Virus record (IMG/VR): IMGVR_UViG_3300023174_000040
Span: 62,001-126,000 of that record
Length of the DNA: 64,000 bases
Strand: one strand, 5' to 3'
Each line of letters opens with the position of its first letter. The first letter of the stretch is position 1. A program made the translations under genes and the position numbers. Shown here in pieces: positions 9,816-61,430 of the stretch. The notes below the pieces were generated by a model. The model ran no database searches, was not told the DNA's origin, and saw only the letters and a list, made by a program, of their open reading frames with translations.

Positions 9816-10265
9816 ATGCTTAGTGATAAAATAAAAGTATTTCAAAATTGTGCAGGAATTAATTTCGCAAAAGACGGGTATTTATCCCCGGCTCTTATCG
9901 CTGAATATACAGATTCTGAAATCAATGTATATTCAGCAGATTTTAATTCGCCTGATGATAAAGAAAAATTTGCCGACTTTATCAGATATCAGATAATTGA
10001 AAAACAACTTGTTGAGTATCTTTTTGTTGCTGAATCTTGGATGAGTCTTTATGAAAAAGATGGATCTTTTGTTAAAAAGATAGAAGCAATAACAATGACT
10101 CACTGCAGCAAGTTTCTTCCATATGAAACAGGCTATTATTCGGAAATAGAAAGATTTTCCGAAGATACTGCTATTCTTAAAGAATGGGTTGAATTTGGTA
10201 AAACATATGGTAGTGAAGGTAATTTTTCTAATTTATTTCTTAAATGTTCTCACGAATGGAATTGA
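9816..10265 (+). CDS. hypothetical protein
   Basis: 149-aa ORF co-oriented with its neighbours. Confidence 0.7.
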   Translation: MLSDKIKVFQNCAGINFAKDGYLSPALIAEYTDSEINVYSADFNSPDDKEKFADFIRYQIIEKQLVEYLFVAESWMSLYEKDGSFVKKIEAITMTHCSKFLPYETGYYSEIERFSEDTAILKEWVEFGKTYGSEGNFSNLFLKCSHEWN

Positions 10266-10282
10266 ATAATAAAGGAATCATA

Positions 10283-11368
10283 ATGTCTGTGATCGAATCT
10301 GCCAATCTGTATTATAAAGAAGGCGCCAGTGACAAAGTTTATCACGCTACCATTGAAGATATTAGCAATGGGTATGTTGTGAATTTTAGTTATGGACGTA
10401 GGGGAAGTGCCTTGAAAACAGGTAGTAAAACCCAAAGTCCAACTACTCTCGAAGATGCCAAGACTATTTTTAATAATCTTGTAAAAGAAAAAACGAGCAA
10501 GGGATATAGGTTTGTTGAAAATGCCAATCCCTCTGAAATTCCTGTTGTGAGTGATGATCTGCCTGATACTCCCAATGAGATACAGTGCGTTCTCTTAAAT
10601 CCAATTAGTCAAGATGAAGCTGAAAAGCTTATTAATGATGATAATTGGGCTCTCCAGCACAAACTTGATGGTGTCCGGTTTATGCTGGGCAAGGAAAAGG
10701 ATCAGTCTCCCCACGGAATTAATCGTAAAGGCAAAAGGATCAGCATTCCTACTGTGATTTGGAATGTTGTCACTAAGTTTGATGATAATTTCTTAGTTGA
10801 TGGTGAACTAATTGGTGAGACTTTGCACGTTTTTGACATTCTCGAATATCGTAGCGAATGTCTCAGGAAGAAAAGTTTGATTGAGAGGATGAAATATCTC
10901 AAGACTTTGTTTAAGTACATTGAATCTGAGAATATTATTCATACTCCTCTTTATCTTGAAAAGAAAGAAAAGCGTGAGGTTTATGACAGTTTGCTTAAAG
11001 AAAACAAAGAAGGAGTTGTCTTTAAGCATATTGATGCTCACTATAATATTGGTCGCCCTGCAAGTGGCGGAAACTATTTGAAGTACAAGTTCTATAGCAC
11101 TTGTAGTTGCGTGGTAACTGATATTAATAAAAAGCGTAGTGCCGCTATTGGTCTTTATAAGGGAAAGAAACTTGTGAAGGCTGGTAACGTAACCATTCCT
11201 GTTAATTTCGATGTGCCGAATGTGGGCGAAATCGTAGAGGTAAAATACCTCTACGCCAGAAAGCAATCTGGTTCTCTGTATCAACCTATTTATTTGGGTG
11301 TTAGGAATGACATCTCAAAAGAAGAGTGCCAGCAAACACAATTAAAGTTTAAAGCAGAAGAAGAATGA
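10283..11368 (+). CDS. lig: WGR-domain ATP-dependent DNA ligase
   Basis: N-terminal WGR-like SDKVY...FSYGRRG; adenylation motif QHKLDGVR, VDGE, FDIL, EGVVFK, LKYKF; OB fold with EVKYL and YLGVRND. Confidence 0.9.
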   Translation: MSVIESANLYYKEGASDKVYHATIEDISNGYVVNFSYGRRGSALKTGSKTQSPTTLEDAKTIFNNLVKEKTSKGYRFVENANPSEIPVVSDDLPDTPNEIQCVLLNPISQDEAEKLINDDNWALQHKLDGVRFMLGKEKDQSPHGINRKGKRISIPTVIWNVVTKFDDNFLVDGELIGETLHVFDILEYRSECLRKKSLIERMKYLKTLFKYIESENIIHTPLYLEKKEKREVYDSLLKENKEGVVFKHIDAHYNIGRPASGGNYLKYKFYSTCSCVVTDINKKRSAAIGLYKGKKLVKAGNVTIPVNFDVPNVGEIVEVKYLYARKQSGSLYQPIYLGVRNDISKEECQQTQLKFKAEEE

Positions 11369-21718: not shown

Positions 21719-22348
21719 ATGTACGATAGTTTTAAATATCTTTATCCGCCTCGCCCGGAAAATGCCCTGCCGCCGGATAGAATCCCGGTGTTTGAAAAGT
21801 CGGGGTATACTGGGCAATACAAGAAGAATGGCACTTGTAGCATCTTTGCAATCAATCATCCCAAAGATTTTATTGCAATGACTCGCCACAATGATAACCA
21901 TAAACAGTGGGAATTTTCCAACTATTTTAGGGATTGTTTCACAAAGTATCTTCCGGCCGATAAGTGGCACGTTCTTGTTGGTGAAGTAATTCACAGCAAA
22001 ACAACCAGCATCAAAGACACTGTTTATATCTTTGATATTATCGTATATAACTCCGAAGAACTTTATGGAAAGACTTTTACTGAACGGCAGAATCTTCTGA
22101 GGGATATTTTCCATCCTGAAAATAAAAAAGAAGAATACAGCCACTTTGAAATTGAGCCAAGATTTTGGCTTGCAAAAAATATCGAAGAAGGTATCCTAGA
22201 TCTCTTCAACAATATCAAAGATAAAGATGTTGATGAAGGCTTTGTGTTAAAAAAGAGAGATAGCGTCCTAAAGGATTGTGCTGGTCAAAAAAGCAATAAT
22301 AGTTGGCAAATAAAATTCCGTCATCCTTCAAGGAAGTATAGGTTCTAA
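21719..22348 (+). CDS. ATP-dependent ligase-family nucleotidyltransferase (adenylation domain only)
   Basis: Motif I QYKKNG, LVGE, IFDII, EGFVLK, WQIKFR; no OB domain. Confidence 0.7.
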   Translation: MYDSFKYLYPPRPENALPPDRIPVFEKSGYTGQYKKNGTCSIFAINHPKDFIAMTRHNDNHKQWEFSNYFRDCFTKYLPADKWHVLVGEVIHSKTTSIKDTVYIFDIIVYNSEELYGKTFTERQNLLRDIFHPENKKEEYSHFEIEPRFWLAKNIEEGILDLFNNIKDKDVDEGFVLKKRDSVLKDCAGQKSNNSWQIKFRHPSRKYRF

Positions 22349-28541: not shown

Positions 28542-28818
28542 GGCCCAGTAGCTCAATTGGATAAGAGCAACAGCCTTCGTGAAATAGGAGTGCTTAAAGA
28601 GAAATCTTTAATGTAGAATCGCTTAAATTCGGTGAAGGCTTAACTGCTAATACCGAGCCAAGCCTAAGCAATTAGGAAGGTGTAGAGACTTAACAGGCGA
28701 CACCTAAAGTTGAAAGACAATGGTGAAGATAAAGTCCAGACCACAAACAGTAATGGTAGTGAAAACTATAGTGGTACCGCTAAGCTGTAGGTTCCAAGTT
28801 CGATCCTTGGCTGGGTCA
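28542..28818 (+). tRNA. tRNA-Arg(UCU) interrupted by a group I intron
   Basis: Exons 28542-28577 and 28780-28818 join into a cloverleaf (GGCCCAG/CTGGGTC, ACAGC-CTTCTAA-GCTGT, TTCGATC loop). Confidence 0.9.
28578..28779 (+). ncRNA. group I self-splicing intron (202 nt, no ORF)
   Basis: Core motifs aaattcggtgaa, aataccgagcc, gtagagact, aaagtcc; terminal G; P1 CTTC/GGAG with a U-G wobble at U28577. Confidence 0.9.
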
Positions 28819-28876
28819 TTTTGTTTTGTTTTGAAAAAGAGCAAAGTATTTACTATTAATATTTTGTAGTAATCAC

Positions 28877-29016
28877 ACAAGAGTAGCTCAACGGGTAGAG
28901 CGTTTGACTGTCCAAAGCCACTGAATTGAAGCTCAAAAAAGCTGGCAATCTATCGGGTTCAATACCCAAACAGTGGATTAATCAAATGGTTGCAAGTTCG
29001 AATCTTGCCTCTTGTG
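28877..29016 (+). tRNA. tRNA-Asn(GUU) with a 67-nt anticodon-loop insertion
   Basis: ACAAGAG/CTCTTGT acceptor with G73, D- and T-arms intact; removing 28911-28977 restores TTTGA-CTGTTAA-TCAAA. Confidence 0.8.
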
Positions 29017-29017
29017 C

Positions 29018-29281
29018 TTAGTTTTTTCTATCATGATAATCAACAACTTCTCTACACAATTTAACAAATTCTTCTGAACTTAAAGTGTGTTTTGCTAAAT
29101 TGGCCTCCTTGAGAACAAGTTGACAATTATCTAGTGTGTTTTCTCCACCACTGTCAACCAGAGTCTCTAGTGGTGTTGGTTTTTTTATGCCTACTCCTGA
29201 AATGATTGAAAAGAGGAGGATTGAAGTATTAGAAATTCCTGAAGATATTTTGTCTGCTGCTCTTGGTAGCCCATCGGCCAA
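29018..29281 (-). pseudogene. HNH endonuclease C-terminal remnant
   Basis: SGGENTLDNCQLV...AN.AK resembles the HNH tail, but the catalytic His is absent and the 5' part overlaps a + strand gene. Confidence 0.4.
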
Positions 29282-37991: not shown

Positions 37992-38233
37992 ACCATGCCA
38001 AAGTGTATTATCGGACCAAATGGAGTAGCACATGGCTTAATGTGCAAAGATGGCAAATTATGTGGACAAAAAGGAAATATTCTACAAAGTTATTTAAAAG
38101 ATTCTAAGACAAAATCAGATCTACTCCTTATAGGTCCAATGTCATATGTTTCAAAAAAACCTTTATGGCCAATTTTGTGAATTCGCTATTTTACAAAAAA
38201 AGAAGATATTCAAAAATTAGTGGAGTAAAAAAC

Positions 38234-39193
38234 ATGATAACAATATTTGATGACAATAGAAATTTTTATCCTTATGAATTAATGAACTTCCCAGAAGGTG
38301 AAAGTTTTGTTAAACTAAATATTAATTCAAAAAACCCTGTAAATATACTTTGGAAGTATGAGAATGACCAAGAATTATTTGTTTTGGGTTTAATTATTGA
38401 TGTTATTTGTCACGATGGGGGTGTACTTAAAAATCTTTATATTCCTTATTTTCCTCACGCAAGACAAGATAGAAACACATCAAAAAATCAACCTTTTTCA
38501 CTAAGAGTATTTGTTGGATGTTTGAAGGAAATTCTTTTTGGCTACCTTACGAATGGGCCGTATCTGGAAAAAATAAAAATTCATAGTTTAGATATTCACT
38601 CTGGCGTTTTGAGTTCTCTAATTAACAATAATCCTTACTTAGTATGGCTATCAAACCCAGAGTTATTTAAATCATTAGATTCTTGTGAATTAATTCAGCA
38701 TTTTAATTTTAGCCATATAAATTGTATAATTTGCCCAGATAAAGGAGCGAAAGATAGATCAACACAATGGGCAGATAAATTAAACTTGCCAATTTTATAT
38801 TGCGAAAAAACAAGAGATCCAAGTACTGGTAGATTAAGTGATCCTGTTATTGTTAATATGGAAAATTTAAGGTCTGAATGGGCATACCTTCTAGTTGATG
38901 ATATTGGCACAGGATTTGGAACTCATATTCAATTGGCTAATTTTATTAAATCTAAAATTAATGTTCCAATAGAAATTTTTGTTTCTCATGCTGGATTTTC
39001 TAATGGAATCGAACCAGTATTAAATGTTTTTGATAGAATTTATACAACAAACAGTCTGGTCAAGGGACACAACAAAATATTAGACTTGCAAAGACAAAAC
39101 AACCCGCTACAATGGGGGAGTATATTTGTTGTTGATGTTGAAAAAATCTTTGAAAAACAAATGCAAGAGCGGCGAGGAGCAGACCATGAATAA
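38234..39193 (+). CDS. prs: ribose-phosphate pyrophosphokinase-like protein (candidate Adps)
   Basis: NFPEGES, IPYFPHARQDR, LDIHS, CPDKGA, KTRD, LLVDDIGTGFGT, VSHAGF. Confidence 0.9.
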   Translation: MITIFDDNRNFYPYELMNFPEGESFVKLNINSKNPVNILWKYENDQELFVLGLIIDVICHDGGVLKNLYIPYFPHARQDRNTSKNQPFSLRVFVGCLKEILFGYLTNGPYLEKIKIHSLDIHSGVLSSLINNNPYLVWLSNPELFKSLDSCELIQHFNFSHINCIICPDKGAKDRSTQWADKLNLPILYCEKTRDPSTGRLSDPVIVNMENLRSEWAYLLVDDIGTGFGTHIQLANFIKSKINVPIEIFVSHAGFSNGIEPVLNVFDRIYTTNSLVKGHNKILDLQRQNNPLQWGSIFVVDVEKIFEKQMQERRGADHE

Positions 39194-39644
39194 AACCGAC
39201 AACGAGCCGTCTCCTGGTTCTCACGGGTGGTATCGCATTGTCGTCGATAGTCAAACAGGCAAAGTCATCAGGCGAGAAGACTGCGGCGATTCTCCGCTAA
39301 AGGTTGAACGTGAAGCAAACGACGATGACGACAAATCGCACACGCTGATAGCGTCCGCTGTGGTTTCTCTTGTCGCCTCTCTTGTTACTTCGGCGTGTTT
39401 TATTTCTTGCCAACGGCAGGACGTTGACGGCCGACTTCATCCGGCTCTCTTGAAACTGACGGACCAACAGAACGACCTAAACATCCATGACATCCAGTTG
39501 GAGCGGCTGTGGAGCAATATTGTTCTCACCACAATCTCGGCCGCTTTGTCCCGTAGACCTCAAGCCAAGACGAAATCAAGCGTCTGCGACTTACCCACTT
39601 GGAGCGGCAGGTGCCTGATATTAGCCAAACTTATAAATTATTAA
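39186..39644 (+). CDS. hypothetical protein on a GC-rich patch
   Basis: MNKTDNEPSPGSHG start; about 53% GC in a sampled 60-nt line. Confidence 0.5.
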   Translation: MNKTDNEPSPGSHGWYRIVVDSQTGKVIRREDCGDSPLKVEREANDDDDKSHTLIASAVVSLVASLVTSACFISCQRQDVDGRLHPALLKLTDQQNDLNIHDIQLERLWSNIVLTTISAALSRRPQAKTKSSVCDLPTWSGRCLILAKLINY

Positions 39645-39877
39645 ATATTGCTCTTGAGAAAAGCTTAATAATTAGAGATTGTCGGCAGGTTTTCTGCGAT
39701 GAAAAATTGTATAATGAAATTTATGATATAATACAACACACTACTACCATTGACACACTAGATCAAATGGCAGATGAAGTGCATTGTTTGGCAAATAACG
39801 GTTATATTGATGATGATGCGGAGCGTTTTTTGATAATGAAAATTAGTGATCAAAAAATTTCACTTTCTAATACTTAA
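39599..39877 (+). CDS. hypothetical protein
   Basis: ORF track. Confidence 0.55.
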   Translation: MERQVPDISQTYKLLNIALEKSLIIRDCRQVFCDEKLYNEIYDIIQHTTTIDTLDQMADEVHCLANNGYIDDDAERFLIMKISDQKISLSNT

Positions 39878-39895
39878 AACAAAAAGGAGTTATAA

Positions 39896-41521
39896 ATGAA
39901 CACTTTGCCAATTTTACTCAGCGACAGTTACAAACAATTTCATTGGATGATGTATCCAAAAGGAATTACTAAATTGTATAGTAATATGACCCCAAGAAAT
40001 TTTAAGCACCTTAAAACAGATCGTGCATTATTTTTTGGGCTGCAATATTATATTAAGGAATACCTTATCACACAATGGAACGAAAACTTTTTCAAAAAAC
40101 CAAAAGAAGAAGTTGTTAAAGAATTTAAAAGATTTCATAAACATTTTAGTAACTATGATATGCCAACAGAGCATATTGAAAAATTGCATGATTTAGGCTA
40201 TATGCCAATTCTTATCAAAGCATTACCAGAAGGTAGTCTTGTTGAAGAAAAAGTGCCATTTTTTACTATCACAAACACCCACCCAGACTTTGCTTGGTTG
40301 GTTAACTTTCTTGAAACTCAAATGAGTACAAGTATTTGGGATTTTTGTGTTGTAGCAACCATTGCTTATGAATATCGTAAAATATTAAATAAATGGGCAA
40401 ATAAAACTTGCGATAATAGAAATTTTGTTCAATGGCAAGGTCATGATTTCGCACAACGAGGAAGAAGTAGCCAAGAAAGCACACTAAACCAAGCAGGACA
40501 TTTGCTTAGTTTTACCGGCACTGATACCATTCCCAGTGTTTTAATGCTGGAAAAATATTATAATGCCAATATGGAAAAAGAGTTAATCGCAAGTAGTGTC
40601 CCGGCTACAGAACACAGCATTATGACTAGTTATGGAAAAGAAAATGAAATTGATGCTTTTGAAAGAATCTTGGATCAATTTCCAACTGGTATTGTGAGCA
40701 TAGTTAGCGACAGTTTTGATCTGTGGCAAGTATGCACTAGTTTTTGTACTCAACTTAAGGATAAAATCTTAAGCAGAGATGGAAAAATGGTCATCAGACC
40801 TGACAGTGGAGATCCTGCTGATATCGTGTGCGGATTAAATATACTTAAATTTGATAATTTTAAAAAAGCCGAAGAATGTTTTCATTTTCATATAGATAAT
40901 GGTAAAAATCTGTTTATAGTTGATGACAAGTGCTACAAGGTTAAAATTCATTCTGGTAGTGAGTTTATCTACGAGCCATATAATCTAAACCCTTCGGAAA
41001 AGGGAGTTGTAGAACTTCTTTGGGACGTTTTCGGTGGTACAATTAACAGTAAGGGATATAAGGAACTAGATTCTCATATCGGAGTAATCTACGGCGATAG
41101 CATTAGCCGAGAAAGAGCAGAAGATATTTGCTCTAGGCTAGAAAAGAAAGGTTTCGCTAGTAATAATATCGTTTTTGGCATAGGAAGTTACACATATAAT
41201 TATAACACTAGAGATAGTCTTGGTATTGCTGTTAAAAGCACCTATTGCGAAGTAGATGGTATTCCTAGGGAGATTTTCAAAGACCCTGTAACGGATGACG
41301 GCGTTAAAAAGAGTGCAAGAGGATTACTGAAAATAGACTCAAATGAAAATAGAGACTATATTCTTAAAGATTGTGTTTCTAAAGAAGAAGAAACTCAAGG
41401 TTATTTGAAGCCAGTGTTTTCTGACGGCAAACTTTTAGTAGATGATGAATTGAGTGTCATTAGAACAAGAATAAACCATGCAGAACTCTGGCTCTGTCCA
41501 GCGATTAAAGATGAACAATGA
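39896..41521 (+). CDS. nadV: nicotinamide phosphoribosyltransferase-family protein (candidate Namat)
   Basis: LLSDSYKQFH, FFGLQY, HDFAQRG, FTGTDT, VPATEHS, SIVSDSFD, VIRPDSGDP, IYGDSI, FGIGS, KDPVTDDGVKKSARG. Confidence 0.95.
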   Translation: MNTLPILLSDSYKQFHWMMYPKGITKLYSNMTPRNFKHLKTDRALFFGLQYYIKEYLITQWNENFFKKPKEEVVKEFKRFHKHFSNYDMPTEHIEKLHDLGYMPILIKALPEGSLVEEKVPFFTITNTHPDFAWLVNFLETQMSTSIWDFCVVATIAYEYRKILNKWANKTCDNRNFVQWQGHDFAQRGRSSQESTLNQAGHLLSFTGTDTIPSVLMLEKYYNANMEKELIASSVPATEHSIMTSYGKENEIDAFERILDQFPTGIVSIVSDSFDLWQVCTSFCTQLKDKILSRDGKMVIRPDSGDPADIVCGLNILKFDNFKKAEECFHFHIDNGKNLFIVDDKCYKVKIHSGSEFIYEPYNLNPSEKGVVELLWDVFGGTINSKGYKELDSHIGVIYGDSISRERAEDICSRLEKKGFASNNIVFGIGSYTYNYNTRDSLGIAVKSTYCEVDGIPREIFKDPVTDDGVKKSARGLLKIDSNENRDYILKDCVSKEEETQGYLKPVFSDGKLLVDDELSVIRTRINHAELWLCPAIKDEQ

Positions 41522-44392: not shown

Positions 44393-44492
44393 GGTGAATG
44401 TAGCGTAGTGGTAGCGTGAGGGAAGTTCCGAACTGCGACAGCAGAGTAGGCAAACAAATGCCCTTGTGGTGGTTCGATTCCACCCATTCGCC
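44393..44492 (+). tRNA. tRNA-His-like gene with an aberrant, expanded anticodon arm
   Basis: G-1:C73, GTGAATG/CATTCGC acceptor and GGTGG-TTCGATT-CCACC T-arm; the anticodon loop is replaced by about 38 nt with no GTG. Confidence 0.6.
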
Positions 44493-51381: not shown

Positions 51382-51466
51382 GCTGAAGTGGCGAAACTGG
51401 CGAAACGCAGGGGACTTAAAATCCCCCACATTAGAAACACTGCGGGTTCGAATCCCGCCTTCAGCA
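51382..51466 (+). tRNA. tRNA-Leu(UAA)
   Basis: GCTGAAG/CTTCAGC acceptor, GGGGA-CTTAAAA-TCCCC anticodon arm, long variable arm, TTCGAAT loop. Confidence 0.95.
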
Positions 51467-51482
51467 CTGTAAATAAAAACAA

Positions 51483-51842
51483 GGGGGCGTAAAGGTATCG
51501 ACTGGATAAAAAGATTTATAACTGCATGTCGAGGTTAGTCGAACGGCCTCGTTAAAATTCGACTAAAGCCTTAACTGGCACTGTTAATTACGCAATGGCT
51601 GCCTGATAAAAAGGGCAACCACGAATCTAGGAAGCTAATGTTGGATGCGTCCTAAAATTCGTCGTCAAATCCAACTGGTTTTCTGGTGGTCAACTTACCT
51701 GAAAACGAGAAAATAGGTTGAGAGATTTTAAAGACTTTTGTTTATTGTAATCTTTAAAATCTATTTGAACAATAAACCAAACATGTGAAGAAGTTATATT
51801 TTGATTTATTTCAGGACAGGAGTTCGACTCTCCTCGCCTCCA
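51483..51842 (+). ncRNA. ssrA: tmRNA; tag (A)GTVNYAMAA*
   Basis: 5' GGGGGCG pairs with 3' CGCCTCC-A, G-U at position 3, T-arm caggag-ttcgact-ctcct; tag ORF ggc act gtt aat tac gca atg gct gcc tga. Confidence 0.92.
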
Positions 51843-51867
51843 TTTATAATTTCAACTAAAGGAAAAC

Positions 51868-55786: not shown

Positions 55787-56116
55787 ATGAACGATATGCT
55801 AAAAGAAAAAATAAGTGAAAAGCCAGTCAGGATGATTGAAAAGGCTTGCTATTTCAATCAAATGAGGTCAGATGGAGACACTTGGCGTATTCATGGCGTT
55901 GTGGATGGAACGGAATTGATGCCTAGTCGCCCAATCGGTTTCGATAAAGATAAAAATATATTCGAAACCAAGAACACAATTTACAAGGTTGTTTCTTGGG
56001 GTACTATGACCAAGTGCATTGACGAAGAATTCTGGAAGCAAGTAGAAGCTGATATTAAAGAGATTAGGCAGCGACTTAATAGCTACCACAATTTAAAAAG
56101 GTTCAGTCTTGATTAA
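55787..56116 (+). CDS. hypothetical phage protein
   Basis: IFETKNTIYKV motif. Confidence 0.65.
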   Translation: MNDMLKEKISEKPVRMIEKACYFNQMRSDGDTWRIHGVVDGTELMPSRPIGFDKDKNIFETKNTIYKVVSWGTMTKCIDEEFWKQVEADIKEIRQRLNSYHNLKRFSLD

Positions 56117-56762
56117 GATTATCAAAGAAATTGTTTCAAAAGAAACTCATTGCTATGTTGCCGTAAGCATGGGTGTCGATAGCGTATCTTCTTTATTTTG
56201 GTTGAGAAGCAAGGGATACAACATTACTCCATTGCACTTTAATCATAATCTAAGAGAACAGAACCATGCCATGGAAAATAAGTTCCATGAACTTTGTGGT
56301 AAATTAGGATTAAAAGGTATTGTGGGCAGAGGTGAAAACTTAAAAACAGAAAAAGATTGCAGAGATGCCCGCTTAAATTTTTATAAAGAGGTTGTGGATT
56401 ACGAAGGTTATGTAATCACTGCTCATCATCTCAATGATTATGTGGAAAGCTATTTAATTAATTGTTTTCGTGGACAACCCAATCACAATCCTTTTGAATT
56501 AATTAGCGAGTTCGATGGATTCAAGATCATCCATCCTTTTCTATTAAGTAAGAAAAAAGATTTTCAAGAGTACGTTGACAGGAATAAATGGAACTGCTAT
56601 ACTGTGGAGGACGAAACCAATAAGGTTGTCAAAGGAAGCAGAAGAAATTGGATTCGTCAAATAATCATTCCAGAAATGAAAAAACAAAAGTTAAGTCTAG
56701 AAAAATATTGTTCAAGGAGAATTGAAAAGAACTTGAAGAATAAGACGGTAATTCTAGACTAG
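56109..56762 (+). CDS. tilS: tRNA(Ile)-lysidine synthetase, catalytic domain only
   Basis: VAVSMGVDS (PP-loop), HFNHNLR, RDARLNF, ITAHHLNDYVESYL, HPFL, EDETN, RNWIR. Confidence 0.9.
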   Translation: MIKIIKEIVSKETHCYVAVSMGVDSVSSLFWLRSKGYNITPLHFNHNLREQNHAMENKFHELCGKLGLKGIVGRGENLKTEKDCRDARLNFYKEVVDYEGYVITAHHLNDYVESYLINCFRGQPNHNPFELISEFDGFKIIHPFLLSKKKDFQEYVDRNKWNCYTVEDETNKVVKGSRRNWIRQIIIPEMKKQKLSLEKYCSRRIEKNLKNKTVILD

Positions 56763-56778
56763 CACAGTTGGTTAATTT

Positions 56779-57042
56779 CCGAAGGTAGCAAAACGGTTAA
56801 TGCAACAAACTCATGAATTTTCGTGCCATACGATTGGAAACTTCGTATGGGATGTCGTCAAATTCGGTGAAACCTAAATGCGTGAGCATATGGCAATGCC
56901 GAGCGAAGCCCGTAAGGGAACGTGTAGAGACTTAACGGCGACCACCTAAATCGTAAGATATGGTGAAGACAAAGTCCAAGGAGTGGTGAAAATCACACAA
57001 ACTTGAATTTGTAGACTGTGGGTTCGAATCCCACCCTTCGGA
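56779..57042 (+). tRNA. tRNA(CAU), probably Ile2, interrupted by a group I intron
   Basis: Exons 56779-56814 and 57006-57042 give CCGAAGG/CCTTCGG-A and ACAAA-CTCATAA-TTTGT; lies 16 nt after tilS. Confidence 0.88.
56815..57005 (+). ncRNA. group I self-splicing intron (191 nt, no ORF)
   Basis: aaattcggtgaa, caatgccgagc, gtagagact, aaagtcc; terminal G; P1 CATGAA/TTCGTG with a U-G wobble at the 5' splice site. Confidence 0.9.
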
Positions 57043-57046
57043 CGTA

Positions 57047-60144: not shown

Positions 60145-60240
60145 ATGGAACACCTAAAAGACTTAAAGATTCTTCCTACCGATTATTTTGAGTATGGAGG
60201 ACAAATTGAACGATGGAAAGGTGAACTACCCACCCCCTAA
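60145..60240 (+). pseudogene. short ORF apparently truncated by the TnpB element
   Basis: MEHLKDLKILPTDYFEYGGQIERWK runs into the element end at 60221 and stops within it. Confidence 0.45.
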
Positions 60241-61430
60241 AGGGAGTGGGCTTCAAGTTTCATAGCCTTGTCTAACGACAACGACTCCACTTGTTTTTGT
60301 TTATTGAGCGACTTGGTTCCCAAACCACTCATATTCAAACCTTGTTTTAGTATGTTGAGACTGGCGTTGTGGTCTCGGTCAATGTTCTTCCCACAAACGC
60401 ACTTCCATTCACGATCTTTCAGCGATAATTCTTGATTGATGTATCCACAATCAAAGCAAGTTTTACTGCTTGGGAAAAATCGGTCTATCTTAATCAGTGT
60501 TCGTCCATACCATTCTGCTTTGTAGGATAGTTGACGAACGAATTCTCCCCAACCGCAATTCATCACCGATTTTGCCAACTTATGATTACTCATCATGCCC
60601 TTTACATTAAGGTCTTCTACGCATATGATTTGGTTTTCGTCAATCAACTTTCTGGAAAGTTTATGCAAGAAGTCCGTTCTATTGTTGGTGATTTTTTCAT
60701 ATATCTTGGCTACTTTAAGTCTTTGTTTTCCTCTGGTGGTTCCTCCTTTTGTCTTTTTGCTCAATTGTCTTTGGTTGTATTTTAACTTTTTCTCTAACTT
60801 GTGGTAGTGTTTAGGGTTGTCAAAAACTTCGGCGTTGGAGCAAACAGCAAAGCTTTTGATGCCCAAATCAACACCTATTTTGTTTTTGTTTTTCTTGAGT
60901 TTATTTTGCTCAACTTCACAAGTAAGTGAAACAAAATACTTGTTTGTTGAAGTCTTGGATATGGTGATGAACCTTATCTCACCAAATTCACGATGGATGT
61001 TTAGTCTGATTCCTTCCTTGAATTTGGGAAAATATATTCTGTCATTCTTGACAGAGATGTGTTGTGGAACTCTGAAACTTTGCTTTTTGTGTTTTGACTT
61101 GAAGATTGGAAACTTGGTTTCTTTCCTGAAAAACTTGTTGTATGCTGTGTCCAAGTCACGCAATGTGTGTTGCAATGTTTGGCTGTTGACTTCCCTAAGC
61201 CAGTTGTATTCGGTCTTCTTTTTAACCTTGGTCAGTTCGTTGGCACAATCGTAGTAGTTCAATGTCTTCTTGTTGTCTAAATACTCTTCTTTTCGTCTGT
61301 TCAAGAAATAATTCCACACGAACCTTCTGCAACCAAAGTGTTGACTCAGTTTTTCTTTTTGGTCTTTTGTGGGTAGTAGTTGAAACTTAAACGATTTGAG
61401 CATACAATGGTATGTATGCAGGTCAGTCCA
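60221..61430 (-). mobile_element. TnpB-only IS200/IS605-family (IS1341-like) element
   Basis: Right end reads ...gaagcccactccctttagggggtgggtagttcac on the minus strand; left boundary is approximate; no tnpA. Confidence 0.75.
60237..61403 (-). CDS. tnpB: RNA-guided endonuclease TnpB
   Basis: N-terminal HTH_OrfB-like region, RuvC IGVDLG / VEDL / DRDHNA, zinc finger CFDCG...CVCG. Confidence 0.95.
   Translation of the reverse strand: MLKSFKFQLLPTKDQKEKLSQHFGCRRFVWNYFLNRRKEEYLDNKKTLNYYDCANELTKVKKKTEYNWLREVNSQTLQHTLRDLDTAYNKFFRKETKFPIFKSKHKKQSFRVPQHISVKNDRIYFPKFKEGIRLNIHREFGEIRFITISKTSTNKYFVSLTCEVEQNKLKKNKNKIGVDLGIKSFAVCSNAEVFDNPKHYHKLEKKLKYNQRQLSKKTKGGTTRGKQRLKVAKIYEKITNNRTDFLHKLSRKLIDENQIICVEDLNVKGMMSNHKLAKSVMNCGWGEFVRQLSYKAEWYGRTLIKIDRFFPSSKTCFDCGYINQELSLKDREWKCVCGKNIDRDHNASLNILKQGLNMSGLGTKSLNKQKQVESLSLDKAMKLEAHSL

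What the first reader, a model, noticed from the sequence alone, without database searches (positions are those of the whole stretch)
28911..28977. tRNA-shaped 67-nt insert nested in the anticodon loop of tRNA-Asn
Seen: the insert has no group I core. Its ends can pair (tcca/tgga or ccactg/cagtgg). It holds a D-arm-like agct-caaaaa-agct and a T-arm-like gggt-tcaat-accc, so it resembles a tRNA lacking an anticodon arm inside another tRNA. Precise removal restores CUGUUAA, with a 1-nt register ambiguity. Inference: it is a non-canonical intron needing an unknown splicing route, a shield against anticodon nucleases, or a tRNA-mimic decoy. The window does encode a stand-alone ligase-family protein and an RNA-repair-type HAD.
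Basis: partly seen in the sequence, partly recalled or inferred. Interest (0 to 1): 0.75.

Follow-up and report, generated by a model that had tools for sequence, protein, structure and literature searches.

The report
tRNA-shaped mini-intron in phage tRNA-Asn
A huge freshwater phage carries a tRNA-Asn gene whose anticodon is split by a conserved 67-base RNA that folds like the top half of a tRNA. It belongs to no known intron or ribozyme class, so it probably represents a new way of interrupting and repairing a tRNA.

Summary
Window 28877-29016 is a tRNA-Asn(GUU) gene interrupted by a 67-nt insert.

I found seven variants of the insert (64-69 nt) in huge-phage contigs. Each sits at the same site and occurs once per genome. 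None was found in 36 other phage records that carry uninterrupted tRNA-Asn genes.

The insert folds as a three-way junction: a 6-bp closing stem, a D-arm-like hairpin followed by an invariant GG, and a canonical T-arm. Four base pairs show compensatory changes, and the G-U wobbles fit only the + strand.

It has no group I core, no BHB motif, and no match to any Rfam ribozyme.

In one allele group the exons differ at 2-4 of 72 positions while the inserts differ at 8-18 of about 66. The interrupted gene is therefore under selection, and the insert is probably removed.

In the other group near-identical inserts sit in very different exons, next to a free-standing HNH endonuclease gene. That gene is decayed in this window. 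This pattern suggests homing-like spread.

The splicing route is unknown. My best guess is RNase P/RNase Z-type excision followed by sealing with the phage T4-Rnl1-like ligase. No RNA data exist.

The parts
28877..28911 (+). tRNA-Asn(GUU) 5' exon: acceptor 5' strand, D arm, anticodon-stem 5' strand, loop C32-U35
   Evidence: Rfam tRNA alignment. Exon helices covary and are 100% paired across alleles. About 90% identical uninterrupted phage tRNA-Asn genes exist.
28912..28978 (+). 67-nt intervening sequence, a new structured RNA family of 64-69 nt across 7 variants
   Evidence: One copy per genome. No Rfam family at E<=10 except a weak antisense hit.
28912..28917 (+). 5' spacer: two free-varying bases (CC here) followed by an invariant AAAG
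   Evidence: Alignment A3. Columns 1-2 vary; columns 3-6 are invariant in 7 of 7.
28918..28923 (+). P1 5' strand CCACUG, pairing with 28971-28976 (acceptor-like stem)
   Evidence: 6 bp, 100% paired in 7 sequences, with one U-A to U-G change.
28925..28949 (+). P2 arm: P2a AUUG/CAAU (28925-28928 with 28946-28949), P2b AGCU/AGCU (28930-28933 with 28940-28943), A-rich loop, invariant GG (28944-28945). D-arm-like.
   Evidence: P2a has two pairs with double compensatory changes (L155 ACC/GGU), although P2a was not in the model used to align. P2b changes from U-A to C-G in L154 and L156.
28953..28969 (+). P3, a T-arm mimic: 5-bp stem and 7-nt loop UUCAAUA closed by G-C
   Evidence: Loop UUCAA is invariant. 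The stem changes from U-A to C-G in L156 and from G-C to G-U in L155.
28971..28978 (+). P1 3' strand CAGUGG, an invariant A, then one free-varying last base (U here)
   Evidence: Alignment A3.
28979..29016 (+). tRNA-Asn 3' exon: U36 A37 A38, anticodon-stem 3' strand, variable loop, T arm, acceptor 3' strand, G73. No encoded CCA.
29018..29152 (-). Remnant (last 45 residues) of a free-standing HNH endonuclease gene, convergent with the tRNA. The catalytic DH motif is lost here.
   Evidence: tblastn gives 91% identity to the intact 210-aa HNH of L011. Also phrog endonuclease VII, translation, and intact copies in L011 and L002 with Pfam HNH_4/HNH.
28542..28819 (+). Context: tRNA-Arg(UCU) interrupted by an ORF-less group I intron, 57 nt upstream
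   Evidence: Rfam RF00028 at 60.2 bits. ARAGORN with introns allowed.
21719..22348 (+). Context: stand-alone ligase-family nucleotidyltransferase (209 aa, motifs I, III, IIIa, IV, V, no OB domain). Candidate sealing enzyme.
   Evidence: Pfam PF01068. Sequence motifs. Phage-only family, part of which also matches RNA_ligase. Present in G001, G002 and G005 but in only 1 of 20 controls.

Best explanation
The insert is a real intervening sequence of a new kind. It is a 64-69-nt RNA placed between U35 and U36 of a functional phage tRNA-Asn(GUU).

It folds on its own into a mimic of the tRNA top half: an acceptor-like stem stacked on a canonical T-arm, plus a D-arm-like hairpin whose GG could close the elbow.

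At the DNA level it behaves as a mobile element. It spreads into different tRNA-Asn alleles, in some phages together with a neighbouring free-standing HNH endonuclease gene.

At the RNA level it must be taken out for the tRNA to decode. The route I think most likely is as follows.
1. The host's tRNA end-processing enzymes treat it as a tRNA. RNase P cuts 5' of the acceptor-like stem (AAA|G, 28916|28917). An RNase Z-type activity cuts after the unpaired base that follows the stem (28978|28979).
2. This leaves a 3'-OH and a 5'-phosphate.
3. The five leftover bases (NNAAA) are trimmed.
4. The nick in the anticodon loop is sealed by the phage's T4-Rnl1-type RNA ligase, or by its stand-alone ligase-family protein.

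Shown: the structure, its conservation, the insertion site, selection on the exons, and the gene content. Inferred: removal of the insert, the enzymes, the cut sites and the end chemistry.
For: Structure and family:
- Seven variants sit at the identical site.
- 96.8% of cells are paired.
- Four pairs show double compensatory changes, against at most 1 in the slid controls.
- The G-U wobbles are valid only on the + strand.

tRNA mimicry:
- The T-loop UUCAA is invariant, with a G-C closing pair.
- A 4-bp D-like stem is followed by an invariant GG.
- The P3 3' strand runs straight into the P1 3' strand in 4 of 7 variants.
- The insert's model picks up a real tRNA as its only other structured hit.

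Functional host gene:
- Within L007, L154, L155 and L156 the exons differ at 2-4 of 72 positions and the inserts at 8-18 of about 66. Fisher p is as low as 2e-4.
- The only stem change in those exons is the pair 3-70, as G-U, G-C and A-U.
- It is the only tRNA-Asn in G000, G002 and G005.

Known routes not seen:
- No group I core.
- No Rfam ribozyme.
- No EndA or RtcB in the three phage records searched (G000-G002).

Ligase and end chemistry:
- A T4 Rnl1 homologue (phrog_562 at 1e-59; PDB 2C5U at 2e-7; KLDG motif) is present in all three sufficiently complete insert-bearing records. It is present in 3 of 20 controls.
- G002 and G005 have no polynucleotide-kinase-type (AAA_33) domain. G000, G001 and G002 have no PNK3P phosphatase domain. 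This fits ends that need no healing.
- No phage tRNA gene encodes CCA, and tRNAs lie 3 nt apart. RNase P cleavage followed by 3' trimming is therefore already the normal path for these clusters.

Mobility:
- Inserts are 90-96% identical inside exons that are 64-72% identical.
- An intact HNH gene lies next door in L002 and L011, with a remnant here.
Against: - No RNA evidence exists. The two RNA runs that share any words with the region hold only foreign group I cores.
- An RNase P cut at the base of the acceptor-like stem leaves five extra bases (NNAAA) on U35. Their precise removal has no known mechanism, and a design built for RNase P would not need that conserved spacer.
- The insert alone does not score as tRNA in Rfam. 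Its 1-72 position would be a G-A mismatch.
- The ligase co-occurrence may only reflect lineage. G007 has Rnl1, the mini-ligase and group I introns, but an uninterrupted tRNA-Asn.
- The host and its enzymes are unknown.
- All records are incomplete contigs (3-88% complete).
Confidence: 0.35

Rival explanations
1. The insert is autocatalytic. It would be a new small ribozyme that cuts itself out, either by true self-splicing or by self-cleavage at both ends followed by sealing with Rnl1 or a host RtcB.
For: - Unpaired bases next to the splice sites are invariant: AAAG before P1 and A after it.
- The 5' exon end CUGU can pair with the (A/G)C(A/G)G of the P1 3' strand in all seven variants. The two splice sites could therefore be brought together (read).
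- No splicing endonuclease is encoded.
- The neighbouring tRNAs use self-splicing introns.
Against: - 64-69 nt with one variable linker is far below any known self-splicing RNA.
- Most conserved unpaired bases are already explained by tRNA mimicry (GG and the T-loop).
- No match to any Rfam ribozyme at E<=10.
- The last base is A or U, not G.
- The intron's first two bases and its last base vary freely, which is unusual for a catalytic site.
Confidence: 0.15
2. A dedicated but unrecognised protein endonuclease, from phage or host, docks on the tRNA-like fold or on the tRNA body. It measures to both splice sites in the manner of archaeal or eukaryal splicing endonucleases, and a ligase joins the exons.
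For: - The bases that flank both cuts on the intron side vary freely. That is what is expected when position is set by structure rather than sequence.
- Three ligase-family genes are shared by G000, G002 and G005: Rnl1, the WGR-ligase and the mini-ligase. About a dozen further proteins shared by the three are of unknown function.
Against: - No EndA family member.
- No BHB: the sites lie in a 10-nt/5-nt asymmetric internal loop with no conserved helix between them.
- No gene is conserved next to the tRNA or next to Rnl1 in all three genomes.
Confidence: 0.2
3. The insert is never removed. It would be a selfish DNA insertion that protects the gene from the neighbouring HNH endonuclease at the cost of a dead tRNA. 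Alternatively, the transcript is cut into tRNA halves plus a tRNA-like small RNA that act as a decoy or regulator.
For: - The HNH gene is adjacent in L002 and L011, and a remnant survives in the window.
- Exon covariation between the distant alleles could pre-date recent insertions.
- No spliced RNA has been seen.
Against: - In the L007/L154/L155/L156 group the insert has drifted by 12-27% while the exons changed at only five columns. None of those changes breaks a pair, and the loop halves CUGU and UAA are intact. A dead gene would not be held like that.
- It is the only tRNA-Asn gene in each genome.
- The HNH gene is absent near the gene in G002 and G005.
Confidence: 0.15

Closest known systems
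Group I introns in bacterial and phage tRNA anticodon loops (Rfam RF00028; e.g. the tRNA-Arg and tRNA(CAU) introns of this same window)
   Same: - Sits inside the anticodon itself; the neighbouring tRNA-Arg intron here sits at 34/35.
- The 5' exon ends in U.
- ORF-less.
- Highly similar copies occur in genomes whose proteins are only 35-40% identical, which indicates lateral spread.
   Different: - 64-69 nt against about 190-220 nt.
- No P3-P9 core and no Rfam match.
- The last base is A or U, not G.
- tRNA-like three-way junction instead.
Bulge-helix-bulge tRNA introns of archaea and eukaryotes (EndA/Sen endonuclease plus RtcB or Trl1 ligase)
   Same: - Short and non-catalytic-looking.
- Boundary bases are free to vary.
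- Exon joining probably depends on a protein ligase. The Rnl1 family (PF09511) also contains the yeast tRNA-splicing ligase domain.
   Different: - No BHB motif.
- Position 35/36 rather than 37/38.
- No EndA or RtcB in the phage records.
- The setting is a virus of bacteria.
tRNA-like processing signals cut by RNase P and RNase Z (mascRNA from MALAT1, plant mitochondrial t-elements, mitochondrial 'tRNA punctuation')
   Same: An acceptor/T-arm mimic embedded in a longer transcript, which would be released by the tRNA end-processing enzymes. From established knowledge; see PMC1920247 for t-elements.
   Different: Those elements separate independent RNAs and nothing is rejoined. Here the element splits a tRNA, whose halves would have to be religated.
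T4 PrrC / Pnkp / Rnl1 anticodon-loop break-and-repair
   Same: A nick in the anticodon loop of a tRNA is sealed by an Rnl1-family ligase. These phages encode a clear Rnl1 homologue.
   Different: In T4 the break is an attack by a host nuclease, and the ends need healing by Pnkp. Here the break would be programmed by the gene itself. No kinase-type (AAA_33) domain was found in G002 or G005, and no PNK3P domain in G000-G002.
Collaborative homing of an ORF-less intron with a free-standing endonuclease (F-CphI with the cyanophage psbA intron, PMC6083498; T4 mobE with I-TevIII, PMC2790892)
   Same: - An endonuclease gene lies beside, not inside, the intron.
- The same site is occupied in some alleles and empty in many homologous genes.
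- The flanking exons are mosaic.
- The endonuclease gene has decayed in one genome.
   Different: - The intron is not group I.
- Cleavage of uninterrupted tRNA-Asn DNA by this HNH protein is untested.
- Several carriers lack the HNH gene.

Membership tests
Group I intron | Conserved catalytic core (P3-P9) recognisable by RF00028 | tested here: not met
   No RF00028 match on the insert, while both real group I introns of the window score 59-60 bits. Alignment to 7 local group I introns scores no better than shuffles.
Group I intron | U at the end of the 5' exon and G as the last intron base | tested here: not met
   The 5' exon ends in U35, but the last intron base is U or A in all 7 variants.
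BHB (archaeal/eukaryal) tRNA intron | Two 3-nt bulges holding the splice sites, separated by a 4-bp helix | tested here: not met
   The splice sites lie in an asymmetric 10-nt/5-nt internal loop between the anticodon stem and P1. The one helix predicted there in the window (GUCCA/UGGAU) is absent in the homologues.
BHB (archaeal/eukaryal) tRNA intron | EndA-type splicing endonuclease and RtcB ligase available | tested here: inconclusive
   PF01974 and PF01139 are absent from G000, G001 and G002, with positive controls matching. The records are 50-75% complete and the host is unknown.
tRNA (inner element as a true nested tRNA) | Four-arm cloverleaf scoring with RF00005 | tested here: not met
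   No RF00005 hit on the insert alone at E<=10. No anticodon arm. No parent tRNA found in G000, G002 or G005. It keeps only the acceptor-like stem, the D-like stem with GG, and the T-arm.
tRNA-Asn(GUU) (outer gene) | Cloverleaf, loop CUGUUAA after removal of the insert, discriminator G73 | tested here: met
   57.9 bits with the insert skipped. 21 exon pairs are 100% paired, and 16 of them show double changes. Uninterrupted phage tRNA-Asn genes about 90% identical exist. ARAGORN calls the G005 copy Asn(gtt) with a 64-nt intron.
Known small self-cleaving ribozymes (hammerhead, twister, twister-sister, pistol, hatchet, HDV-like, hairpin) | Match to the family covariance model | tested here: not met
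   All-Rfam scan of the 67 nt at E<=10. The only hit is a weak antisense match to RF04354 (18.9 bits; gathering score 65.7).
MITE / IS-derived repeat | Many copies per genome, terminal inverted repeats with target duplication | tested here: not met
   Exactly one copy in each of G000-G005 and none in 36 other records. Always the same tRNA site.
Mobile intron with free-standing homing endonuclease (collaborative homing) | Endonuclease gene adjacent; the same site occupied or empty among homologous genes | tested here: met
   Intact HNH gene beside the gene in L002 and L011, with a remnant at 29018-29152. Many empty-site homologues exist. However, there is no HNH gene near the gene in G002 or G005.
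Mobile intron with free-standing homing endonuclease (collaborative homing) | The endonuclease cuts the uninterrupted allele and not the interrupted one | not testable with these tools
   Needs a cleavage assay.
T4 Rnl1 RNA ligase family (candidate sealing enzyme, G000:C1:53885-54940, outside the window) | PF09511 domain with KxDG motif; similarity to T4 gp63 | tested here: met
   PF09511 at 55 bits (cut-off 28.3). phrog_562 at 1.3e-59. PDB 2C5U at 2e-7. KLDG motif seen in the alignment.

The most novel reading that the evidence does not exclude
This would be a third route of tRNA splicing. The intron is shaped like a tRNA so that the cell's own tRNA end-processing enzymes (RNase P and RNase Z) excise it, and a phage T4-Rnl1-type ligase reseals the anticodon loop. 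That would give Rnl1 a housekeeping role beyond repair of nuclease damage. It would also show that a 65-nt ORF-less RNA can be a mobile intron without being a ribozyme.
Probability: 0.25. Interest if true: 0.9.

Novelty: categorically new. Interest (0 to 1): 0.8.

Why it matters
- **A new intron type.** Bacterial and phage tRNA introns are known only as group I introns, with a few group II cases. Protein-spliced tRNA introns are thought to be confined to archaea and eukaryotes. A conserved, covarying, tRNA-shaped 65-nt intervening sequence in a phage tRNA fits neither. If it is spliced it defines a new intron type and probably a new splicing route.
- **A direct experiment.** It makes an open question testable: can tRNA end-processing enzymes plus an RNA-repair ligase act as a splicing machine, and is that why many phages carry Rnl1?
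- **Gene conflict at tRNA genes.** It links tRNA gene evolution to homing-endonuclease conflict. Exons are reshuffled around a constant insert.
- **Annotation.** Standard tRNA finders miss or mis-name these genes (not found, then called Asp or Ile), so phage tRNA sets are under-counted.
- **Possible tool.** A compact excisable tRNA-shaped cassette could be useful in synthetic biology.

Tried and rejected
**RNA evidence**
- Two run searches and one read-laying were done.
- RNA runs X25 and X26 cover only 28588-28779, with foreign group I cores. None covers the tRNA-Asn.
- DNA runs X3 and X7 hold the insert and show no insert-less joint.

**Wider searches for the insert**
- Eight scans of viral contigs, one of metagenome contigs and one of genome contigs.
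- All other pattern hits were chance matches or ordinary tRNAs.
- No bacterial genome held it.
- INPHARED phages matched only the group I region.

**Origin of the insert**
- Derivation from a group I intron is rejected.
- Derivation from a tRNA of the same genomes: only the T-arm is similar.

**P2a pairing** first looked unsupported in L007. It was rescued by L155 and L156.

**The 5-bp helix GUCCA/UGGAU** in the window's minimum-energy fold is not conserved.

**Enzymes looked for and not found in the phage records**
- RtcB, EndA and the PNK3P phosphatase were absent from G000-G002.
- HAD_2 and the RNase Z-like metallo-beta-lactamase were absent from G000, G001, G002 and G005.
- An AAA_33 kinase is present only in G000 and G001.

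**Ligase co-occurrence**
- It is suggestive: Rnl1 in 3 of 3 against 3 of 20, and the mini-ligase in 4 of 4 against 1 of 20.
- It is confounded by lineage. G007 has both ligases and group I introns but an uninterrupted tRNA-Asn. G012 and G013 have neither ligase, no Rfam group I match and no insert.

**Other negative results**
- No gene neighbours of Rnl1 are conserved.
- RIIA as a probe for relatives found only G001.
- Two weak hits of model R2 were a real tRNA and a TPR coding region.
- The sigma-70 promoter scan gave nothing above chance.
- Literature searches found no description of such an insert.

Full report
**Setting**

The window is bases 62001-126000 of a 323-kb IMG/VR phage contig (G000) from lake water. 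CheckV rates it 64% complete, and its G+C content is 36%. It encodes RIIA, NAD-salvage enzymes, several ligase-family proteins, a tmRNA and about ten tRNAs. None of the tRNA genes encodes CCA.

**The observation**

Rfam's tRNA model matches 28877-29016 at 57.9 bits, with 70 nt in place of 3 in the anticodon loop. ARAGORN misses the gene by default and calls it Asp when introns are allowed.

The exons fold as:
- acceptor stem ACAAGAG/CUCUUGU
- D arm
- anticodon stem UUUGA/UCAAA
- T arm GCAAG/CUUGC
- discriminator G73

Taking out 67 nt gives the loop CUGUUAA.

In L007 and L011 the base before UAA is A, so only the cut CUGU|...|UAA restores CUGUUAA. Dozens of uninterrupted phage tRNA-Asn genes are about 90% identical to those exons, and all read CTGTTAA with G73. 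The insert is therefore 28912-28978, between U35 and U36.

**Homologues**

Pattern scans found the same insert at the same site in six further contigs:
- L002/G001 (251 kb)
- L007/G002 (188 kb)
- L011 (5.9 kb)
- L154/G003
- L155/G004
- L156/G005 (204 kb)

Covariance models R1 and R2 find exactly one copy in each of G000-G005. They find none in 36 other phage records that carry an uninterrupted tRNA-Asn. Two weak hits turned out to be a real tRNA and a TPR coding region. No bacterial genome contig and no GenBank phage held the insert. It is therefore a rare, single-copy, site-specific element and not a repeat.

**Structure**

Across the seven variants the insert reads as follows:
- two variable bases
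- an invariant AAAG
- P1, CCACUG/CAGUGG
- P2a, 4-5 bp
- P2b, AGCU/AGCU, with an A-rich loop
- an invariant GG
- a linker of variable length
- P3, a 5-bp stem with the loop UUCAANN closed by G-C
- zero or one A
- the P1 3' strand
- an invariant A
- one variable base

Pairing is 96.8%. Four pairs show changes on both sides:
- two in P2a (UU/AA to CC/GG in L155)
- one in P2b (U-A to C-G in L154 and L156)
- one in P3 (U-A to C-G in L156)

The slid controls show at most one such pair. P2a was not part of the model that made the alignment, so its covariation is independent evidence. The G-U wobbles in P1, P2a, P2b and P3 are pairs only on the + strand. Selection therefore acts on the sense RNA.

The T-loop consensus, the G-C closing pair, the 4-bp stem followed by GG, and the direct run of the P3 3' strand into the P1 3' strand all mimic the acceptor/T-arm/elbow half of a tRNA. 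There is no anticodon arm. In 4 of 7 variants no base at all separates P3 from P1. Counting a G-A pair at the base of P1, the stack is twelve layers.

The mimicry is partial. The insert alone does not score with Rfam's tRNA model. Its only Rfam hit is a weak antisense match to a family whose consensus contains the complement of a T-arm.

**What it is not**

| Candidate | Result |
|---|---|
| Group I intron | No core match, no similarity to the phage's own group I introns, last base A or U rather than G |
| BHB intron | Splice sites lie in a 10-nt/5-nt asymmetric internal loop |
| Rfam ribozyme | No match |
| Repeat or MITE | One copy per genome |

**Is the interrupted gene alive?**

Exon helices covary strongly across all alleles. 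All 21 pairs are 100% paired, and 16 of them show double changes. Taken alone, that could pre-date recent insertions.

The stronger argument comes from L007, L154, L155 and L156. Their exons differ at only 2-4 of 72 positions. The variable columns are the pair 3-70 (seen as G-U, G-C and A-U), position 26, and two variable T-loop positions. Their inserts differ at 8-18 of about 66 positions, with compensatory changes. Fisher p reaches 2e-4.

So the exons are held more tightly than the insert, over a time in which the insert diverged by 12-27%. It is the only tRNA-Asn gene in G000, G002 and G005. I conclude, with about 0.8 confidence, that the tRNA is used and the insert is removed.

**Mobility**

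The window, L002 and L011 show the opposite pattern. Their inserts are 90-96% identical while their exons are only 64-72% identical. The exons are also mosaic: L011 has L002's acceptor stem, L007's anticodon stem and the window's T arm.

A free-standing HNH endonuclease gene (Pfam HNH_4 and HNH) lies convergent with, and directly 3' of, the tRNA in L002 and L011. In the window only its last 45 codons remain (29018-29152) and the DH motif is gone.

The Rnl1 proteins of G000, G002 and G005 are only 35-40% identical, yet the inserts are 78-87% identical. The group I introns of these phages behave in the same way. The G000 tRNA(CAU) intron is 98% identical to one in G002. One intron family also sits in Arg, Leu, Gln and CAU tRNAs.

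Lateral spread of introns among tRNA genes is therefore active in this phage community. The 67-nt insert takes part in it, in a pattern like collaborative homing (PMC6083498, PMC2790892). G002 and G005 lack the HNH gene near the tRNA.

**How it might be removed**

No RNA data exist. The RNA runs found hold only foreign group I cores, and the DNA runs show no insert-less allele.

Gene content of the phage records:
- RtcB, EndA and the PNK3P phosphatase are absent from G000-G002.
- HAD_2 and an RNase Z-like enzyme are absent from G000, G001, G002 and G005.
- An AAA_33 kinase is present only in G000 and G001.
- A clear T4 Rnl1 homologue is present in G000 (just outside the window), G002 and G005.
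- In G001 the contig ends about 13 kb before the expected Rnl1 position. This is inferred from the collinear positions of RIIA and the mini-ligase.
- Rnl1 occurs in 3 of 20 control records.
- The 209-aa stand-alone ligase-family protein at 21719-22348 has motifs I, III, IIIa, IV and V and no OB domain. It occurs in G001, G002 and G005 and in 1 of 20 controls.

The co-occurrence is confounded by lineage:
- G007 has both ligases and group I introns but an uninterrupted tRNA-Asn.
- G012 and G013 are about as close to G000 as G002 and G005 are, judged by one shared phosphoesterase.
- They have neither ligase, no Rfam group I match and no insert.

Putting the anatomy and the gene content together, the route I rank first is this:
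1. RNase P cuts 5' of the acceptor-like stem.
2. An RNase Z-type enzyme cuts after the unpaired base that follows it. This lands exactly on the 3' boundary and precedes a U.
3. The ends are 3'-OH and 5'-phosphate, which need no healing.
4. Rnl1 or the mini-ligase seals the loop.

In these phages tRNAs lie as little as 3 nt apart and lack CCA. RNase P cleavage followed by 3' trimming is therefore already routine for their tRNA clusters.

The weak point is the conserved NNAAA left on U35. Its exact trimming is unexplained. I give this route about 0.3. I give an unknown protein endonuclease 0.2, a new small ribozyme 0.15, and no removal at all 0.15.

**Verdict**

The feature is real and conserved, and it is a structured RNA. 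It is not a member of any known intron, ribozyme or repeat family. The evidence favours a mobile intron of a new type in a working tRNA-Asn. The splicing chemistry remains to be shown at the bench.

Noticed in passing
window 44394-44492 (+): A 99-nt tRNA-like gene (Rfam tRNA, 38.2 bits) with normal acceptor, D and T arms. The middle section has 38 nt in place of 9 and folds into three small hairpins. ARAGORN calls it tRNA-Gly(UCC) with a 27-nt intron at 37/38, but the anticodon stem then has an A-G mismatch. It is 100% identical in G001 and absent from G002, so no comparative test was possible.
   Followed up: partly
window 28542-28819 and 56779-57043; G002 and G001 loci L047-L055: One family of ORF-less group I introns sits in tRNA-Arg(UCU), tRNA(CAU), tRNA-Leu(UAA) and tRNA-Gln(UUG). 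It is shared across genomes whose proteins are about 40% identical. The G000 tRNA(CAU) intron is 98% identical over 235 nt to one in G002, and the Arg intron is 86-93% identical to introns in other tRNAs. This points to recent lateral spread.
   Followed up: partly
window 56109-56762 (+) and 56779-57043 (+): A PP-loop ATPase (PF01171, the TilS-type family) lies directly upstream of the intron-containing tRNA with anticodon CAU. That tRNA may therefore be a lysidine-modified tRNA-Ile2 rather than tRNA-Met. The protein is conserved at 63-64% in G002 and G005.
   Followed up: no
window 51382-51467 and 51483-51845 (+): tRNA-Leu(UAA) is followed by a phage tmRNA with the tag GTVNYAMAA. G002 carries the same tag and G005 carries GTNSYAMAA.
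   Followed up: no
window 10244-11368 (+): A 374-aa protein combines a WGR domain with an ATP-dependent ligase or capping-enzyme nucleotidyltransferase domain. It is 77% identical in G002 and 59% in G005. Counting Rnl1, the 424-aa DNA ligase at G000:47914-49188 and the 209-aa mini-ligase, the phage has four ligase-family genes.
   Followed up: partly
window 60237-61403 (-): A transposase of the IS200/IS605 type (phrog_506, E = 1.5e-135) lies inside the phage genome.
   Followed up: no
G000:C1:174436-175143 (-), outside the window; G002 about 102640; G005 about 133512: A second HNH endonuclease family is shared by the three phages and always lies among tRNA genes. It sits next to tRNA-Glu in G000, and next to intron-bearing tRNA-Gln and tRNA-Leu in G002 and G005.
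   Followed up: no
L002:2016-2327 (-) and L029:1724-2050 (+): A 103-108-aa ORF (MTRCLCLIDDKW...) next to the tRNA-Asn is 93% identical between G001 and G002. It lies on the other side of the tRNA and in the other orientation, and it is absent from G000. This is a local exchange or inversion around the tRNA-Asn gene.
   Followed up: partly
G000:C1:205666-206097 and 232394-232822, outside the window: Two genes of the tRNA nucleotidyltransferase / poly(A) polymerase family (441 and 416 aa) are present in G000 and G001, and one in G005. This fits the lack of encoded CCA in every phage tRNA gene.
   Followed up: no
window 38165-41521 (+): Ribose-phosphate pyrophosphokinase and nicotinamide phosphoribosyltransferase genes lie close together, forming an NAD salvage module.
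   Followed up: no
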